Assembly (NCBI RefSeq): GCF_006345805.1
Contig: NC_043005.1
Coordinates: forward strand, 99,944,001 to 100,008,000
DNA length: 64,000 nt
Direction of reading: 5' to 3'
Source of the DNA: Octopus sinensis
Lineage: Eukaryota
Shown: positions 20,203 to 40,391 of the stretch, in pieces
Layout: each line of letters opens with the position of its first letter
Position numbering within the stretch: the first letter of the stretch is position 1
The notes under the pieces: generated by a model
Seen by the model: the letters and a program-made list of their open reading frames with translations, nothing else
Told to the model about the DNA's origin: nothing
Database searches by the model: none
Position numbers and translations under genes: made by a program

Positions 20203-21657
20203 ATGTATATATATATATATATAGATATATATAGAGAGAGCATGTGTTTAAAAACATTAATTGAAAGAGCTCACACACAAGATAAAAACTTCTTCCCAAA
20301 AATGGTTAGTAATATCCTGATTAAAGATTTCATTACATTTTGTAAAATCATAATTCTTTTAAACAAATCACCTTTACACTTTAAAAATGTATTAAGTAAT
20401 TCACATAGATTTGAAATGTACATATATATATACACATATATCATCATCATCATCGTTTAGAATCTGCCTTCCATGCTGGTGTGGGTGGGATGGCTTGACA
20501 AGAGCTGGCCAGGCAGAATCTTGTACCAGACTTCTGTGACTACTTTGGCTGTTTAATAATGGAAGGCAAGGTTTACAATATTGGAAGAATATCGTTTCCT
20601 TCCATCATTCCCTTTGTTCTTTATGTAGTTCAGGCTTCCGGCAGGCGAAGAGAAAGTACTTCAAGTACAACTGCTATTTACATCTGGTTTATTTACAGGA
20701 AAGGTGAAGTGTGCTGCTCTCAGCTACCATCTTAAGCTCCGTTAGTGTGAGTGCATTGCCTCTGGAGATAGACAGGCAGAAAACCACAGCCAGTGGTGTT
20801 ATTCAGTGCTGCTGTGTAATGGCACTGAAGAAGAGGAATTTGAAGAGGGTTTTCCCTTTATATAGTTTTCTCCAAGAGTTTGTTGTGATCTCACGCATGG
20901 CAAATGGATGCAGGTGAGGTCTCACTCCAGTCTCAGAGATGGCAATGGCTGCCATGAGATCTCATCCAATATGACACTGGCTGCTTGTGTTGCTACAGGT
21001 GGATGCTCTTCCTAACACCAACCACCCAGCAGAGTAAACTTAGTGCTTTTTACATGGCACAAGCACAGGTGAGGTTAGTTTTGTCAAGGTTCTTACAGGT
21101 GGATGCCCTTCCAAACACCAACCACTTTATAGTGTGGACTGGGTGCTTTTTAAGTGGCACCTGCACAGACAGGGTCACCAAGTAACTTGCAAGACAAAAA
21201 TCTTTTGAGAGGGGAGGGGGAGTTGGAGGAGGTGATCTTGCGTCAGATGAGATGAAGGGTTATAGTGAGACAGAAAGACAGAAACAGGTGTGTTGCTGTA
21301 GAAGAGGTATATATATACAACAACTTCTTAGTTTCTGTCCACCAAATCCACTCATAAGGCTTTGGTTACTTGTCCAAGATGCTATACATTAGGATAAAAC
21401 CTAGAACCAAGGGATTTGTAATCAAACTTAACCACACAGCCATGTTTTGAAACTTACTCTTTTACTTGTTTCAGTCATTTGACTGTGGCCATGCTGGAGC
21501 ACTGCCTTTAGTTGAGCAAATTAACTCCAGGACTTATTCTTTGTAAGCCTAGTGCTTATTCTATTGGTCTCTTTTGCCGAACCGCTAAGTTACAGGGACG
21601 TAAACACACCAGCATCAGTTGTCAAGCGATGCTGGGGGGACAAACACAGACACACAA

Positions 21658-21731: not shown

Positions 21732-22026
21732 TTATATATATATACATATATAAATATATATATATAATATATATATATACATATACAATATATATATACA
21801 ATATATATATACATATACATACATATACATATATACATATACATATATATATATACATATACATACATATACATATATACATATATACATATACATATAC
21901 ACATATACATATATATATATATACATATACATATATATATATACATATACATATATATATATACATATACATATATATATATATACATATATATATATAC
22001 ATATACATATATATATATACATATAC

Positions 22027-27240: not shown

Positions 27241-27823
27241 ACAGGATAAATTTAAGGTAATCTGTTATTATTGATTATGTGCACAATATGCATATTCCCA
27301 AGAACTTATGGTGGAATTCTTAACTGCACACTAATGTATATCATATATATAACACACACACACATGCAAGATATAGCATATATCTTATGAACTCACGTTT
27401 AAAACCTGTAAAAACTTCCTAAATAATATAATACACATGAATACACATTCACAAAATGCAGGCATATCACATGTCGTGTACATACATTCATACATGCATG
27501 TATATTTCAACACACACACACATGGATGGGATATTGATACATTCTCATCTATCAATATCCCGTTTCCTTACATGATGCTATTAAAATATATTGAGCTCAA
27601 ATGCTGGCAAAAAAGCCAAGGAAGATAAAAACGAAAGAAATCCCTTAAGGGTCGTCTTCTCTTATGTTTACCTATTTAATTTGAAATCCTGTATATTCTA
27701 ATGTATGTCATGTTGTTCCATTCAAAATGGAGGCGATACCAACATTATTAAGTAGCTTGCTTGAAAAATGAAATTGTAGAATTTCTGTCCACGTGAAACT
27801 ATTGGTAGCATTATTAAGTCATA

Positions 27824-27873
<50 letters not shown>

Positions 27874-28618
27874 TGCACACCACCTATACAGGCACAAAAT
27901 AGAGGAAAACAGGTTTCAAGGAGACAAGAGCTCACCATCTGTAGAGCAGTATATTAAAATGTGTTGTGTCCTGTTGTCTTGCACACAGATATGCAAAGAA
28001 TTAAATGAGAGTTTAGCCTTATTAGAGAATTAAATGAGAGTGTAAGTGATGTGGAATGACTACACTCACAAATTAAATAATATTTTTTCATTACAACAAA
28101 AATGAATTCTTTGAAGATTAAATACCAACAACAAAATATTCTAAATAACATCGAATAACAGTATTAAATTACAGAGGGAAAAATGAAATACGAGAAAGAC
28201 TATTCAATATCCTCAACATCAGAAAGATATATATTCTACAGGTTAATAGTGTTTACCTAGCATCCTAGCAGTGCTCTGTCCAGTTTCTGGAAGTATGTTC
28301 TCTACTTACAGATATCAACAGAATGGCTACAAGAAAATGTCACTCAATTAAGAAGACTTTGCAGTATTCTAAATGCCACAAGTTCTATTTTATGATGTTG
28401 TCCCTTCACATATTTCTTTGAGTCTTCGGTGTTCTCTCTCTATTGATTAGAACATGTCATGGGAATTCATTGGTGGTGCCGTCTATGATCACATGTTTAA
28501 CAATATCAGAATTAAATAGTTTTTGATATATTTTGAGATGAGTCGCTGTTATTGGAATTTTGACGCCAAATACATTGATTAAAAACATTTTCTGTTTTTC
28601 TTTTTAATGTCCACCTAC

Positions 28619-28705
28619 CTACTGTGAAAACAAGCTTTTGAAATGTATGTAAAACATGGAGATATATTCTGTATATTCATGAAATACTTTTAGAGAGAGA
28701 CTAAT
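28619..28705 (-). pseudogene. Degenerate tandem copy 2 of the AGBL4 exon 3' end
   Basis: Reads LKVFHEYTEYISMFYIHFK versus PKLLRMNAEDFSMSNTNFN, with a ~14-nt deletion, donor gtaggtgg and the shared intronic gttattgg..ttttg..gccaaa motif. Confidence 0.6.
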
Positions 28706-29026
28706 CGTTTTGTTAGGTGGTTGCTATGGCAGCTAAACTAATAAGATCATCATTACCATAATCATCATCAACACCATCATCATCTTTGGTATTGGTGGTG
28801 GTAGGGGCCCCATCATGGTTGCCATCATCATTGTCATATTCAGTATAATATAACCAGATTATTAACTCGTTGGACTAAAAACTCGAAGTCCAAAATTTCC
28901 ATTTTGCCAGAGGCATTAGGTTAGCTTTCTACAGAACAACATTCAACAAACCGTCGTTATTGGTTTTGGTGCCAAAAACATTCATTACAAAAATAGAATA
29001 AAAATAAAAACAAAATATCCACTTAC

Positions 29027-29154
29027 CTTTCTGTGATTGCTGGCTTTCACTGGGTCATAATTGAAATTCAAGTGAGACATGGACAAGTCTTTTGGATTTA
29101 CATAAAATTGTTTTATGAAGAATCAATTTCACCTCCCCAATACCCAAAAGGTTG
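29027..29154 (-). pseudogene. Degenerate tandem copy 1 of the AGBL4 exon (pseudo-exon)
   Basis: Homologous frame FFIKQFYVNPKDLSMSHLNFNYDPVKASNHRK versus VFPKLLRMNAEDFSMSNTNFNRDAVKAGTGRR (15/32 identical). Donor AAG|gtaagtgg is retained and downstream intron motifs are shared. Confidence 0.8.
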
Positions 29155-29497
29155 CTACAGTTATCAAACAGATTGTTGTTGTTGTTGCTGTTATTATTAT
29201 TATTATTATTATTGTGATTGCCATGACAATGATGCTGATGATGATGCTGATATGATCAAATAATTAAATATATTCGATTATCAGCCCCCAAACCAGGATT
29301 TCAACCTTTGATGTAACAATAGGTTGTCTATTGAACAGAATTTTATATTAAACTATGTAGTGAATCTTTGTTATTGGGTTTTGGCATCAGAAAAATATAG
29401 GTTATTGACAAAATGAAGAAAAACAAACAAAATATATAAATAAACAAATAAATAAAAACTATTGAAAAAAAAACTGTATTCTAAATATTCCACTTAC

Positions 29498-29700
29498 CTT
29501 CTGCCAGTACCAGCTTTCACCGCATCTCGATTGAAATTTGTGTTTGACATGGAGAAATCTTCAGCATTCATACGAAGTAGTTTTGGAAAGACTGCTTGTT
29601 TCTCTAGACGGTCTACATCTTCAAAAGTGTTGCCATACATAAAACCATTCATGAGGGTTGAATGGGCATGAATGTCAATGTAGAATTCAACATCGTATTG
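29498..29700 (-). CDS. AGBL4: Internal coding exon of cytosolic carboxypeptidase 6 (M14 tubulin deglutamylase); phase 0 to phase 2, 203 nt
   Basis: Minus-strand translation QYDVEFYIDIHAHSTLMNGFMYGNTFEDVDRLEKQAVFPKLLRMNAEDFSMSNTNFNRDAVKAGTGR(R) closely matches the CCP6 segment FYIDIHAHSTMMNGFMYGN...FPKLL...AEDFS...FNRDAVKAGTGRR as I recall it. Acceptor is ttctgtgtatttcacag and donor is AG|gtaagt. Length equals 67 codons + 2 nt. Confidence 0.95.
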
Positions 29701-29904
29701 CTGTGAAATACACAGAAGTAATGAAAAATTAAGATAACTTCAAGAAATACTCATACAACAAAAACAAAATGACATTCTAGAAAGAAATTTATTGAAAACT
29801 GACGTTTATAATCAATGTTCCAGGGTGATGTAGGTTGGATGTTTTAGCTTCTAAATTTTTCTCTTAAGTTTTATATTTATCCTCCAAACTTGCAACCATT
29901 CATC

Positions 29905-30360
29905 CTCATCATCATCATCGTTTACTGTCTGCTTTCCATGCTAGCATGGGTTGGACGATTTTGACTGAGGGCTGGTGAACGAGATGGCTGCACCAGGCTC
30001 CAATCTTGATTTGGCAGAGTTTCTACAGATGGATGCCCTTCCTAATGCCAACCACTCTGAGAGTGTAGTGGGTGCTTTTTACATGCCACCTGCATGGAGG
30101 CTAGTCAGGCAGTACTGGCAATGACCTCGCTTGAATCTTTTTACACATGCCACCGGCACAGGTGCCAGTAAGGCAATGCTGGTAATGATCACACACGAAT
30201 GGTGCCCTCTGGCAACGATCATGCTCGGATAGTGCTCTTGGCACCCTACTAGCACGGACACAAGTGCCAGTAAGGTGATGCTGATAATGATCACATTTGA
30301 ATGGTGCCTTTTATGTGCCACTGGCATGGAAGCCAGTTAGCCACTCTGTCAACGATCATC
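29905..30360 (-). mobile_element. RTE 3' UTR-derived repeat (family C). Other copies: ~20450-20540, 20980-21200, 35010-35350, 36640-36760, 46200-46500, 48850-49390, 62830-62975
   Basis: Shares with 1250-1427 the block ggatgcccttcctaacgccaacc / ccatgctagcatgggttggacg and the (CAT)n/(GAT)n tail. Confidence 0.85.
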
Positions 30361-30616
30361 CTACAAAATAATAATTTTTTTCATTTCTCCTCACTCTAAG
30401 TACATATGCATTTAAGATTAAGGCAGCAAGCTGGCAGAACAGCACACAGGATAAAATCAATAGTAGTATTTCTTCCAGTTTTAATGCAGAGGTCGACTTT
30501 GTCTTTCACTCTTTCAAGGTCAATGAAAATTCTATCTATTGATAGCACTGGGTTTGAAGCAATCGACTAGCCCCATCTCACCCAAAATTTCAGGCCTTGT
30601 GCCTGTAGTAGAAAGG

Positions 30617-37600: not shown

Positions 37601-40391
37601 GTGTATGCATGTATATTATAGTGTATGTGTGTTGTGCATGTGTGCATGTGTATGAATATACCAGAGAATATTTTATTGATATATCTTCTGCTACATTTAT
37701 GAATACCTGAATGATTGTGTGTATGTGTGCATGTCTAATAACCAATAGCTTAGTATCTGGTGTGTGTGTGTGTGTATGTGTGTGCCTATATTCCTGTCTA
37801 AAAGACATTACTTAAAATACACAACTACATTCACATTACATTACATACACACAATCAACTTTAAAAAAAAATGTTGAAATGCACACATACATACATACAA
37901 ATATATATGCGTGAGTGACACACACACATGTGTATGTGTAATGCGAACATACACACACATCGAGATAAAAATTATGGTAGCTTTATTTATAAAGAGAAAA
38001 TGAACCTTAAGTTCCTTGTTTAGAATTTCTATATTAATGTTCTCTTCAAATCAGAAAGCTTATGGAAATGCTTCTCTTAAAAGCCATTTATTAATAAATT
38101 AAAAGTTAAAGAAAGTTGTTAAAGACTTCCATCAAATATTCAAAGATATTTAAGAGATTCCAATAAAACCTTAGCTTTCACTCAGTAAACATCTTTCAAC
38201 TTCATCCTTCCTTTTCCGTAATATTTCTATAAATTTAAGAAAGCTACATGCATATCTCTCTCCATTCAATATTTCATTCATTCAGTTAAAATATTATTTG
38301 GTCACATTTACAAGTAGTTTGCTAGGCAAGTGTGTACATGTGTTTGTGTATGTATGTTTTCACACATTAGAATGGTGGACAGGTGAAGGTCAATCGTTCT
38401 ACCCCAACATCAGTATAGTAATCTATCATTTGTAGAAGACATCAAATTTTAAAAGGCCTCATTCACCCAGCTTAAAATAAATACTGTGAAGGAAGAATAA
38501 CTTACTTATGTAGGCAGCAGAAACGCTACAGAAATGACGAAGGTTTCTTAGATTTGTGTTGCTGAATTGAAGTTCTTTCAAATTGACTATCTCTCTAGCA
38601 AGATGTATTTAGACCAGACTATATTGTGAATTCCATGACAAACTACAGTACACTTAGATTTCTATAACACATCACATACATAGACACAGACACATGCATG
38701 CAAAGGATTCCATGAAAATAAAGGTCAATGGACAGTTGTTGCTTCATTAATATTTCAGACATTCTTTACCTTAATTGCAATGGTTCTTGTGTACTGCATG
38801 GGTTGTTGTTGTTTGGCCCCAGGTCAGGTCAGGTCAAGTTATGTCATTCCTGACAGTGCAAACTTATGATCAAAGACATTCTAGTTGTGGTCATCCTGTA
38901 TTTTATAGGTTTCTAGCATTAGATTATGAAATATGTCCTTCCTTTTATTAAGATGATACAAAGTGATTTGATGATTTGGCTGTCGTTCCTAACAAATTCC
39001 CTTATTGGTCCTATGTAGTAAATTAAATATGGCATCAAACAAGTCCTGAGTTCAAATTGTACAATAAGTATAATGTCATCTTTGATAAAATTAACATAGT
39101 TGTTACGACTCACCAGATCTACTTAGGGTGGACTGATATACTCTCCAAGAAGAGATTTGTCTCTCATCTACTTAATATACTGAAACAAAACACCAGATCT
39201 TGTGAACTCAACTTTCCAGTACATTGTAGATGTATCTATAGTTTATTAAATACCAATATTGTGAAAGGTTTCACTTTGTAGCTTGACTGAAGCAGAGTTT
39301 CATTTTTACCATTCTATGCTGTGGGTTTTTTTTAACCTCAAGTCTGTTCTGAAAGAGCAGACCTATGATGAAAGACCTTCCAACCATAACCATCCTATCT
39401 TTTTCTCAGGCAATTTGTGTCCAGGACTACATTATCTAATGTTTAAGGTAGCAAAGTGACAGAATAGTAAGGCCTTGTGGTATTTGTTCCTGTTCTCTGC
39501 ACCCTGAGAGCCAAGGCCAACTTTACGTTTTGTTCTTTGAGAGTCTCTGAGTAAAATGAGCATATTCCTGGGGTTGCTTCTTTTCTAATTTCTTTTTCGA
39601 TTCTACCGGTGATTCAAAGGTGCAGTTTTGTTGCATTGCATCACATTGATCTGGCAAGAAAGTTGTGTTTAGAGCATTCTTGTCAATAGGCATGACTTGT
39701 GGTAAGAAGCTTGCTTCCCAACTACATGGTTCCAGGTTCAGTCCCACTGCATGGCACCTTGGGCAAGTGTCTTCTACTATAGCCTCATGCCGACCAAAAC
39801 CTTGTGAGTGGATTTGGTAGGCAAAAACTGAAAGAAGCCCATCGTATATATCAATGTGTGTGCCCTTAAACCTCTGTTTTCCCCCACTATGACTCGACAA
39901 CTATTGTTGGTGTTTACCTCCCCCTAATTTAGTGGTTTGGCAAAAGAGACAGGCAGAATTAGTATCAGGCTTAAAATAAAATACTGGGGTCCATTCATAT
40001 GACTAAAAAGTCTTCAAGGCAGTGCCCCAGCATGGCTGCAGTCTAATGACCGAAACAAGAAAAAGATGCATTCCTCTTCTTACTCTCGAATGCATCAGAA
40101 AAAGCTGTTTTTTGCTCTGTCTTTCTGTGAGTTAACAAGTGTTAATTTAATTGCAAATATTGGCACCAAGCAGAGGTTTCTTTTCAGGGAAAGATAACTT
40201 CCATGTTAATTTTAGGAGTGGCTGTGTGGTAAGTAGCTTGCTTACCAACCACATGGTTCCGGGTTCAGTCCCACTGCGTGGCATCTTGGGTAAGTGTCTT
40301 CTACTATAGCCTCGGGCTGACCAAAGCCTTGCGAGTGGATTTGGTAGACGGAAACTGAAAGAAGCCTGTCGTATGTATGTATCATCATCAT

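What the first reader, a model, noticed from the sequence alone, without database searches (positions are those of the whole stretch)
28540..29700. Tandem array of decayed copies of the AGBL4 zinc-ligand exon, each retaining a 5' splice site
Seen: directly 3' (minus strand) of the real exon are two further units with donor boundaries at 29026 and 28618, spaced 471 and 408 bp. Each repeats the exon 3' half, the gtaag(t)/gtaggt donor and an intronic gttattgg-ttttgg-gccaaa motif. Copy 1 keeps an indel-free 32-codon homologous frame (15/32 identity) and a perfect gtaagt donor, but has one extra base at the donor. With the candidate acceptor at 29155-57, its inclusion gives a premature stop in either phase. 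A weaker fourth donor lies at 28303-28308. Inference: this is an old exon triplication that is either dead, used as alternative 5' splice sites or poison exons (NMD regulation of a tubulin deglutamylase), or a remnant of mutually exclusive exons.
Basis: partly seen in the sequence, partly recalled or inferred. Interest (0 to 1): 0.7.

Follow-up and report, generated by a model that had tools for sequence, protein, structure and literature searches.

The report
Decayed partial exon copies in intron
Just downstream of one exon of an octopus tubulin-deglutamylase gene (CCP6/AGBL4), the intron holds two old, decayed tandem copies of the exon's last ~40 codons with its splice donor and nearby intron; they look like ordinary dead relics, not working exons.

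Summary
On the minus strand, the last ~118 nt of the CCP6/AGBL4 exon (29700-29498), its donor and ~340 nt of intron recur twice in tandem, with GT at 29497, 29026 and 28618. Similarity far exceeds shuffles (z = 17, 7.6, 9.1). The units occur nowhere else in the window. The array is also in the independent Octopus vulgaris reference assembly. It is absent from Argonauta and from a more distant cephalopod-like taxon.

The copies look dead:
- Copy 1's changes fall evenly on codon positions (11/8/5, versus 1/0/15 for the real exon against Argonauta).
- Exon-derived and intron-derived parts are equally diverged.
- Copy 2 has a 14-nt deletion, and every frame has stops.
- The copies lack the exon's 5' part, its acceptor and the zinc-ligand motif, so they cannot be mutually exclusive exons.

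Copies 1 and 2 share derived states, so the array arose in two steps. The "fourth donor" belongs to no unit.

Copy 1 keeps a consensus-perfect donor, so rare cryptic or poison-exon use is not excluded. No transcript data could be reached.

In passing: amphioxus AGBL4 has independently duplicated the homologous 17-codon exon, and RefSeq annotates the pair as mutually exclusive isoforms.

The parts
29498..29700 (-). Real CCP6/AGBL4 exon: 203 nt, QYDVEFYIDIHAHS...KAGTGR(R), with acceptor ...tttcacag| and donor AAG|GTAAGT (GT at 29497-29496).
   Evidence: It is 96-100% identical to the Octopus models P0001 and P0074 and 66-83% identical to CCP6/AGBL4 of other animals. It aligns to human CCP5 'YYVDLHGHAS...' in PDB 8v3m/8v3q.
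29158..29620 (-). Unit U0, the source segment of the duplication: the last ~118 nt of the real exon (from about 29615), the donor, and ~340 nt of proximal intron ending in an (AAT)n/(CAA)n microsatellite.
   Evidence: Three-way alignment; self-BLAST.
28733..29157 (-). Unit U1 (copy 1). The exon-derived part is 29157-29027, including the open 32-codon frame 29122-29027 (FFIKQFYVNPKDLSMSHLNFNYDPVKASNHRK). The donor is AAAG|GTAAGT (GT at 29026-29025, one extra A). Intron-derived sequence follows.
   Evidence: The donor scores the same as the real one and is one of 3 such sites on this strand of the 64 kb.
28511..28732 (-). Unit U2 (copy 2), as far as homology can be detected. The exon-derived part is 28732-28619, with a 14-nt deletion and stops in all frames. 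The donor is TAG|GTAGGT (GT at 28618-28617). About 100 nt of intron-derived sequence follow.
29365..29398 (-). Intronic motif, U0 copy (ctgatgCCAAAAcCCAATAACaaag).
   Evidence: (families D8, D18).
28950..28985 (-). Intronic motif, U1 copy (tttggcaCCAAAACCAATAACgacg).
   Evidence: The pattern occurs nowhere else in the window.
28545..28580 (-). Intronic motif, U2 copy (tttggcgtCAAAAttCCAATAACagcg).
28304..28309 (-). NOT part of the array. It lies inside the terminal exon (28326-28260) predicted in the O. vulgaris model CAI9729590.1.
   Evidence: (no unit homology).

Best explanation
The array is a dead relic of two successive tandem segmental duplications, by unequal crossing-over or replication slippage.

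The duplicated segment was about 420-470 bp. Its 5' breakpoint lay inside the CCP6/AGBL4 exon, near codon 29. Its 3' breakpoint lay about 340 nt into the downstream intron, which is more than 29 kb long. The first unit stayed joined to the exon's 5' part and its acceptor, so the gene was undisturbed. The extra units landed in the intron as acceptor-less exon fragments and have decayed like the intron around them.

The sequence shows directly: the homology, the unit boundaries, the two-step order, the codon-blind decay, the stops and the frame defects.

Inferred, not shown: that the spliceosome normally ignores the copies, joining the real donor at 29498|29497 to a distant next exon outside the window. 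At most they would contribute rare cryptic products carrying premature stops.
For: - The homology is real and colinear across the exon part, the donor and the intron.
- It is not a dispersed repeat. Only the microsatellite part matches elsewhere in the window.
- It is not an assembly artefact. The copies are only ~60% alike, and the array is present in the independent O. vulgaris assembly OX597823.1 with 10 substitutions and 4 indels in 1.7 kb.
- Decay is neutral. Real vs U1 differences by codon position are 13/8/12, and those polarised as U1-derived are 11/8/5. The real exon against Argonauta gives 1/0/15.
- Identity is the same in exon-derived parts (60-63%) and proximal intron-derived parts (56-60%) for all pairs, including U1 vs U2.
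- U2 carries a 14-nt deletion. All frames of U1 and U2 carry stops. U1 ends one base out of phase.
- The array is not more conserved than other intron between the window and O. vulgaris: 0.2, 0.8 and 1.2% per 500-nt bin against a median of about 1%, with equally low bins far from any exon.
- It is absent from 13 kb downstream and 10 kb upstream of the orthologous exon in Argonauta hians, and from ~600-680 nt downstream in a more distant cephalopod-like taxon.
- The copies are closer to the octopus exon (59-65%) than to the Argonauta or decapod-like exons (50-54%).
- The array was built in two steps. U1 and U2 share 15 states that differ from the real exon against 5.8 expected, and both begin with TAGCAACC.
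- The acceptor-like TAG at the start of each copy descends from the exon-internal GTAGAC. Pyrimidine content upstream is only 0.53-0.63, against 0.68 for the real acceptor.
Against: - U1's donor is still a perfect AAG|GTAAGT followed by GGA, identical to the real one over 10-12 bases. Only three sites on this strand of the 64-kb window score that high. A strong donor 471 nt downstream of a real one could be used.
- The intronic CCAATAAC / CAAAA block is better kept in all three units than its surroundings.
- The 1-kb array shows 5 substitutions against O. vulgaris where about 10 would be typical. This is suggestive at most.
- No RNA data and no genome of an intermediate relative (O. bimaculoides, Hapalochlaena, Eledone) could be examined. 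Lack of function is therefore inferred from the decay pattern, not shown.
Confidence: 0.8

Rival explanations
1. The copies work as regulated poison exons or decoy 5' splice sites. Occasional use of TAG|C (29155 or 28724) with the U1 or U2 donor would insert 128 or 105 nt carrying a stop, sending the CCP6 mRNA to NMD and so tuning deglutamylase level.
For: - U1's donor is as strong as the real one, and U2's is moderate.
- Both copies start with TAG|CAACC.
- Every inclusion product has a premature stop.
Against: - All these features are inherited from the parent exon; none has been gained.
- The acceptors have poor pyrimidine tracts.
- There is no sign of constraint.
- The array is absent from Argonauta and from the more distant taxon.
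- No transcript evidence was obtainable. The cephalopod CCP6 models in the protein collection are fragments, and the O. vulgaris model skips both copies.
Confidence: 0.1
2. The copies are the remnant of a cluster of mutually exclusive exons, with selector and docking RNA structures in the repeated intron motif.
For: - Tandem duplication that takes adjacent intron along is the proposed origin of such clusters (PMC6071210).
- Amphioxus AGBL4 has an annotated mutually exclusive pair at the homologous 17-codon exon.
Against: - The octopus units lack the exon's 5' part and its acceptor. They could only be appended after the real exon, never substituted for it.
- U1 is one base out of phase, and U2 has a 14-nt deletion.
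- No target is complementary to all three intron motifs. The best shared duplex is about -14 kcal/mol, roughly 2 sd from the mean.
- The duplication is lineage-specific.
Confidence: 0.02
3. The retained donors serve the long intron itself. They could be U1 snRNP landing sites that suppress premature cleavage and polyadenylation, or, at U2 (ttgttttcacagTAG|GTAGGT), a recursive-splicing ratchet point.
For: - The host intron is more than 29 kb long.
- U2 places a pyrimidine-rich stretch plus AG directly before a GT donor.
Against: - The sites lie only 0.5-0.9 kb into the intron, where a ratchet point gives little benefit.
- The U2 arrangement is a by-product of the 14-nt deletion.
- There is no conservation evidence, and nothing was tested at the RNA level.
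Confidence: 0.04
4. The similarity is due to chance or low complexity, to a transposable element carrying an exon fragment, or to an assembly artefact.
For: The region is AT-rich and each unit ends in microsatellites. A SINE-like element lies just upstream.
Against: - Shuffle z-scores are 7.6-17 and E = 3e-14.
- The units have no other copy in the window.
- Exon, donor and intron are colinear across units.
- The array is present in a second, independent assembly.
- Copies only ~60% alike cannot be duplicated haplotigs.
Confidence: 0.01

Closest known systems
Unannotated intronic homologues of exons left by tandem exon duplication (Ivanov & Pervouchine 2022, PMC9013439; from my own knowledge also Letunic et al. 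2002 and Kondrashov & Koonin 2001)
   Same: Exon-derived sequence lies in tandem in the adjacent intron of the parent gene and arose by local duplication. In human, about 2% of exonic nucleotides have an intragenic homologue at 80% identity or more, mostly in introns.
   Different: Here only the 3' ~40 codons plus the donor were copied, so the copies never had their own acceptor. They are much more diverged (~60%) than the usual detection thresholds, and there are two of them from two rounds.
Mutually exclusive tandem exons, e.g. the amphioxus AGBL4 pair ANTNFNRDAVKAGTGRR / EQTSFNRDDEKAGTGRR seen here in RefSeq isoforms
   Same: It is the same gene family and the same protein segment (the end of the octopus exon), duplicated in tandem ~0.5 kb apart.
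   Different: In amphioxus the segment is a separate 50-nt exon. Both copies keep an acceptor, a donor, the length and the phase, and both are annotated in equal-length isoform pairs. In octopus the segment is fused to the upstream coding sequence and the copies are broken. The two events are independent.
Pseudoexons / cryptic exons and NMD-coupled poison exons
   Same: Each is an intronic sequence with a good donor and an AG upstream, and its inclusion would introduce a premature stop.
   Different: Functional poison exons are typically highly conserved and have proven inclusion. Neither is shown here, and the decay pattern is neutral.

Membership tests
Cytosolic carboxypeptidase 6 (AGBL4) gene, M14 catalytic-domain exon | Best and named homologues are CCP6/AGBL4, not other CCP paralogues. 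| tested here: met
   Every named hit of the exon and of exon-containing chimeric queries is cytosolic carboxypeptidase 6 or AGBL4. P0074 is named 'Cytosolic carboxypeptidase 6-like' in O. vulgaris.
Cytosolic carboxypeptidase 6 (AGBL4) gene, M14 catalytic-domain exon | Contains the third zinc-ligand histidine motif (D-[IL]-H-[AG]-H-S). | tested here: met
   DIHAHS is in the real exon and aligns to DLHGHA of human CCP5 structures. Assigning the first His as the zinc ligand rests on general knowledge of M14 enzymes. The copies do not include this motif.
Tandem segmental duplication relic (intronic pseudo-exon fragments) | Significant, colinear, head-to-tail homology that spans the exon-intron boundary. 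| tested here: met
Tandem segmental duplication relic (intronic pseudo-exon fragments) | Not a dispersed repeat or transposable element. | tested here: met
   There are no other copies in the 64-kb window or in the Argonauta locus. The whole genome was not searchable.
Tandem segmental duplication relic (intronic pseudo-exon fragments) | Neutral evolution of the copies. | tested here: met
   Substitutions are blind to codon position. Exon- and intron-derived parts are equally diverged. There are stops and an indel. Divergence from O. vulgaris is not an outlier. Power is limited: 96-130 sites and one very close relative.
Mutually exclusive tandem-duplicated exons | Each copy is a complete exon with its own acceptor and donor, of similar length and the same phase. 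| tested here: not met
   The copies lack the first ~29 codons and the acceptor. U1 is +1 nt at the donor and U2 is -14 nt.
Mutually exclusive tandem-duplicated exons | Open, conserved reading frame in each copy. | tested here: not met
   U1 is open for only 32 codons (P about 0.09 by chance) with 17/32 replacements. U2 has stops in all frames.
Mutually exclusive tandem-duplicated exons | Competing selector and docking RNA pairings. | tested here: inconclusive
   No common partner for the three intron motifs was found within +/-2.5 kb. With only three diverged copies, no covariation test is possible.
NMD-coupled poison exon | Inclusion introduces a premature termination codon. | tested here: met
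NMD-coupled poison exon | Observed inclusion in transcripts, increased when NMD is blocked. | not testable with these tools
   No RNA-seq access. The cephalopod CCP6 proteins in the collections are fragments.
NMD-coupled poison exon | Conservation of the exon and its splice sites above intron background. | tested here: inconclusive
   Only O. vulgaris (about 1% diverged) was available, which gives no power. The array is absent from Argonauta.
Recursive splice site | Polypyrimidine tract + AG directly abutting GTAAGT, deep in a long intron, and conserved. | tested here: inconclusive
   U2 has ttgttttcacagTAG|GTAGGT, but it lies only 0.9 kb into the intron. Conservation and intermediates were not testable.

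The most novel reading that the evidence does not exclude
The decayed copies have been co-opted. U1's intact consensus donor, with the inherited TAG acceptor, would define a low-level 128-nt poison exon, or would act as a U1-snRNP decoy, tuning output of the tubulin deglutamylase CCP6 from a gene with introns longer than 30 kb. Together with the independent, annotated mutually exclusive pair in amphioxus, this would make the exon's 3' end a recurrent substrate for splicing innovation in AGBL4.
Probability: 0.07. Interest if true: 0.5.

Novelty: new member of a known kind. Interest (0 to 1): 0.2.

Why it matters
As it stands, this is a clean, datable example of how partial-exon tandem duplication litters long cephalopod introns with strong decoy splice donors.

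Such copies can mislead gene predictors. The O. vulgaris model at this locus is already a chimeric fragment.

It would matter more only if transcripts showed that the copies are used. In that case it would be a young, lineage-specific poison exon caught soon after birth in a gene that controls tubulin glutamylation in neurons and cilia.

The amphioxus side observation, a conserved and annotated mutually exclusive pair at the homologous exon, may be the more interesting lead for CCP6 biology.

Tried and rejected
1. **Tandem Repeats Finder.** It reported only microsatellites. The units are too diverged for it, so this is not evidence against the array.
2. **Pfam on the 68-aa exon alone.** No hit. 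The exon is too short, so identity was established by homologues instead.
3. **Orthologous DNA from closer octopods.**
   - The O. bimaculoides fragment P0001 is not on record with a contig.
   - The window's own 52-aa ORF is not on record.
   - P0043 and P0197 led only to ~1.2-1.9 kb contigs of a more distant, unidentified cephalopod-like taxon. Its run accessions appear in no paper.
4. **Full-length cephalopod CCP6 isoforms.** Two long chimeric queries returned only non-cephalopod CCP6 among the best 120. The first, short query could not return proteins longer than about 1.75 times the query. That is why P0074 appeared only in the exhaustive search.
5. **Neighbouring AGBL4 exons.** None is in the window, nor in the 23-kb Argonauta locus.
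6. **A fourth unit.** Rejected.
7. **Docking/selector RNA pairing.** No common partner.
8. **Known RNA families in 27500-30500.** Nothing near the thresholds.
9. **'2-stretch' hits in vertebrate CCP6 fragments (P0105, P0109, P0111).** These are retained introns or scrambled models, not duplications.
10. **Literature on AGBL4 in octopus.** None.
Full report
**What is there**

The gene lies on the minus strand. The real exon is 29700-29498 (203 nt). It has acceptor ...tttcacag|CAATAC and donor AAG|GTAAGT, with GT at 29497-29496. It encodes QYDVEFYIDIHAHSTLMNGFMYGNTFEDVDRLEKQAVFPKLLRMNAEDFSMSNTNFNRDAVKAGTGR(R) and ends in phase 2.

Every named homologue is cytosolic carboxypeptidase 6 / AGBL4. 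This holds for the exon alone and for two exon-containing chimeric queries.

The exon is 100% identical over residues 1-67 to the Octopus vulgaris model CAI9729590.1, named 'CCP6-like', and 96% identical to an O. bimaculoides fragment. It aligns to the DLHGHA region of human CCP5 structures. From general knowledge of M14 enzymes, the first His of that motif is the third zinc ligand.

Full-length mollusc CCP6 queries find no other AGBL4 exon in the window. The flanking introns therefore exceed about 34 kb (5') and 29 kb (3').

**Checking the observation**

The repeat finder reports a three-copy 61-nt family at 69-70% identity (start-to-start spacings 470 and 423) and the repeated intronic motif.

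A sensitive self-BLAST of 28000-30000 gives the following:

| Pair | Coordinates | Identity | E-value |
|---|---|---|---|
| U0 vs U1 | 29591-29442 vs 29121-28974 | 67% over 151 nt | 3e-14 |
| U0 vs U1, intron | 29435-29215 vs 29018-28816 | 60% over 224 nt | 4e-6 |
| U0 vs U2 | 29612-29531 vs 28721-28638 | 69% over 86 nt | 4e-6 |
| U1 vs U2 | 29115-28956 vs 28692-28548 | 60% over 162 nt | 4e-6 |

Against 300 dinucleotide-preserving shuffles, the local-alignment scores give z = 17.2, 7.6 and 9.1.

Copy 1 has one extra A before the donor. Its homologous frame is open for 32 codons with 15/32 identities. tblastn with dozens of CCP6 orthologues finds copy 1 independently.

The units are not dispersed repeats. 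Outside the array only the microsatellite part finds matches in the window.

The array is also present in the independent O. vulgaris chromosome assembly OX597823.1. That assembly is colinear with window 42696-18248 and differs from 29850-28150 by only 10 substitutions and 4 indels. An assembly artefact is therefore excluded.

**Corrections to the observation**

- Homology starts near 29615. GTAGACC in the exon corresponds to (G/A)TAGCAACC at the start of both copies. Only the last ~39 codons were copied, without the acceptor and without the DIHAHS motif.
- The 'fourth donor' GTAAGT (28309-28304) is not part of the array.
  - The sequence beyond U2 shows no unit homology (z = 1.3 and -0.3).
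  - Its 9-mer TCT|GTAAGT is unremarkable, with 253 equal or better sites on this strand.
  - It lies inside the terminal exon that the O. vulgaris gene model predicts at 28326-28260.

**How the array arose**

Each unit is colinear: exon 3' part, donor, then proximal intron including the CCAAAA..CCAATAAC block. Each ends in a microsatellite-rich stretch.

U1 and U2 share states that differ from the real exon at 15 aligned sites, where about 5.8 would be expected if they had diverged independently. They also share the junction sequence TAGCAACC and TCACAG before the donor. Jukes-Cantor distances are real-U1 0.60, real-U2 0.48 and U1-U2 0.61. This fits a tree in which U1 and U2 are sisters.

So there were at least two events. 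First a duplication of a ~420-470-bp segment, with one breakpoint in the exon and one in the intron. Later came a re-duplication, or an unequal exchange between units.

The copies are nearer to the octopus exon (59-65%) than to the Argonauta or more distant cephalopod-like exons (50-54%). The bases just after the donor (GTAAGTGGA.ATT) are shared by the three units but not by Argonauta (GTGAGTACG).

The orthologous Argonauta hians locus shows no copy in 13 kb downstream or 10 kb upstream. Contigs of a more distant taxon show none within ~600-680 nt downstream.

The changes assignable to the U1 branch amount to 24-31 of 96 sites. That is clearly less than the per-lineage share of the synonymous distance between the octopus and Argonauta exons (dS about 1.2, from only ~22 synonymous sites, so rough). 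The array is therefore old, but it probably post-dates the Octopus-Argonauta split.

**Is it functional?**

The decay pattern says no for coding.

- Differences between the real exon and U1 are spread 13/8/12 over codon positions. Those that outgroups polarise as U1-derived are 11/8/5. The real exon against Argonauta shows 1/0/15.
- Exon-derived and proximal intron-derived parts are equally diverged in every pair, including U1 vs U2 (60-63% vs 56-60%).
- U2 has a 14-nt deletion. All three frames of both copies have stops. U1's donor is one base out of phase.
- An open 32-codon frame has about a 9% chance in sequence of this composition.
- Against O. vulgaris, the array bins show 0.2, 0.8 and 1.2% substitutions. 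The median is about 1%, and equally low bins lie far from any exon. At this divergence the test has almost no power.

For splicing, the picture is inherited potential without evidence of use.

- U1's donor AAG|GTAAGT scores exactly as the real one. It is one of three such sites on this strand of the 64 kb. U2's TAG|GTAGGT is moderate, with 31 sites as good (the position weights are my own approximations of the metazoan consensus).
- The TAG|C at the start of each copy descends from the exon-internal GTAGAC and has a poor pyrimidine tract (0.53-0.63 vs 0.68 for the real acceptor).
- Read-through of the real donor gives AGG TAA. Inclusion of 29154-29027 (128 nt) or 28723-28619 (105 nt) gives premature stops.
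- The mutually-exclusive-exon reading fails on anatomy: the copies can only be appended, never substituted.
- A search for a docking sequence complementary to all three intron motifs found nothing convincing.
- No known RNA family matches the region.
- No transcript evidence could be reached. The cephalopod CCP6 entries in the protein collections are short fragments.
- The only octopus model covering the locus splices from the real donor past both copies to 28326. That model is itself dubious: its first exon (32780-32676) is a repeated sequence with a second copy at 40090-40191, and its last exon carries an in-frame TAG in the window.

**Comparison with what is known**

Intronic homologues of exons left by tandem duplication are a known class. 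In human, about 2% of exonic nucleotides have an intragenic homologue at 80% identity or more, mostly in introns (PMC9013439). Duplication that takes adjacent intron along has been proposed as the origin of mutually exclusive clusters (PMC6071210).

This case is a partial-exon variant that could never have been a cassette. I file it as a new member of a known kind, of low interest.

**Side observation**

In Branchiostoma the octopus exon is split in two. The small 3' exon (ANTNFNRDAVKAGTGRR) has a tandem twin ~0.5 kb downstream (EQTSFNRDDEKAGTGRR). Both have AG and GT and the same length and phase. RefSeq isoform pairs of identical length (542/542, 526/526, 513/513 aa) differ only by this segment. 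That is an annotated mutually exclusive pair at the homologous position, and it arose independently of the octopus array. In B. belcheri the 5' part of the upstream exon is also present four times.

**Verdict**

The best explanation is a dead relic of a two-step partial-exon tandem duplication (confidence about 0.8). Residual cryptic or poison-exon use is not excluded (about 0.1). A remnant of mutually exclusive exons is rejected.

Noticed in passing
L012 (Branchiostoma belcheri JALCYT010000011.1) 21375-21425 and 21881-21930; proteins P0198, P0319, P0323 vs P0329, P0328, P0330: Amphioxus AGBL4 has a tandem pair of 17-codon exons, ANTNFNRDAVKAGTGRR and EQTSFNRDDEKAGTGRR. Both have AG/GT and the same phase. 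RefSeq isoform pairs of equal length differ only by this segment, so this is an annotated mutually exclusive pair at the segment homologous to the part duplicated in octopus.
   Followed up: partly
L012 19921-20518: In B. belcheri the 5' part of the upstream AGBL4 exon (KVDLDFYIDIHAHSTLMNGF) occurs four times in tandem, 142-231 bp apart and 81-91% alike. The first three copies are truncated.
   Followed up: no
window 32780-32676 (-), 40090-40191 (+), 28326-28260 (-): The O. vulgaris model CAI9729590.1 (128 aa, 'CCP6-like') looks like a chimeric fragment. Its first exon is a repeated sequence with a second copy in the window. Its terminal exon, just beyond the array, carries an in-frame TAG (28304-28302) in the window where O. 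vulgaris has TAC.
   Followed up: partly
window 30210-29895 (-): A SINE-like element ending in a (GAT)n tail lies directly upstream of the exon. Eleven further copies (76-85% identical) occur in the window. Weaker matches were seen in the Argonauta locus.
   Followed up: partly
window 29266-29162 and 28875-28743: The microsatellite-rich ends of U0 and U1 share an ATCATTGTCAT-type core in inverted orientation (inverted pairs I1 and I15). This could be a small inversion or independent microsatellite growth at the duplication junctions.
   Followed up: no
window 28634-28613 (-): U2's 14-nt deletion places a pyrimidine-rich stretch and AG directly in front of its donor (ttgttttcacagTAG|GTAGGT). 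The result superficially resembles a recursive-splicing ratchet point.
   Followed up: no
window 18248-42696 vs L010: The window is colinear with O. vulgaris OX597823.1:116.80-116.82 Mb at about 1-1.6% substitution divergence plus many microsatellite indels. It is therefore the same species or a sibling species, but not the same assembly.
   Followed up: partly
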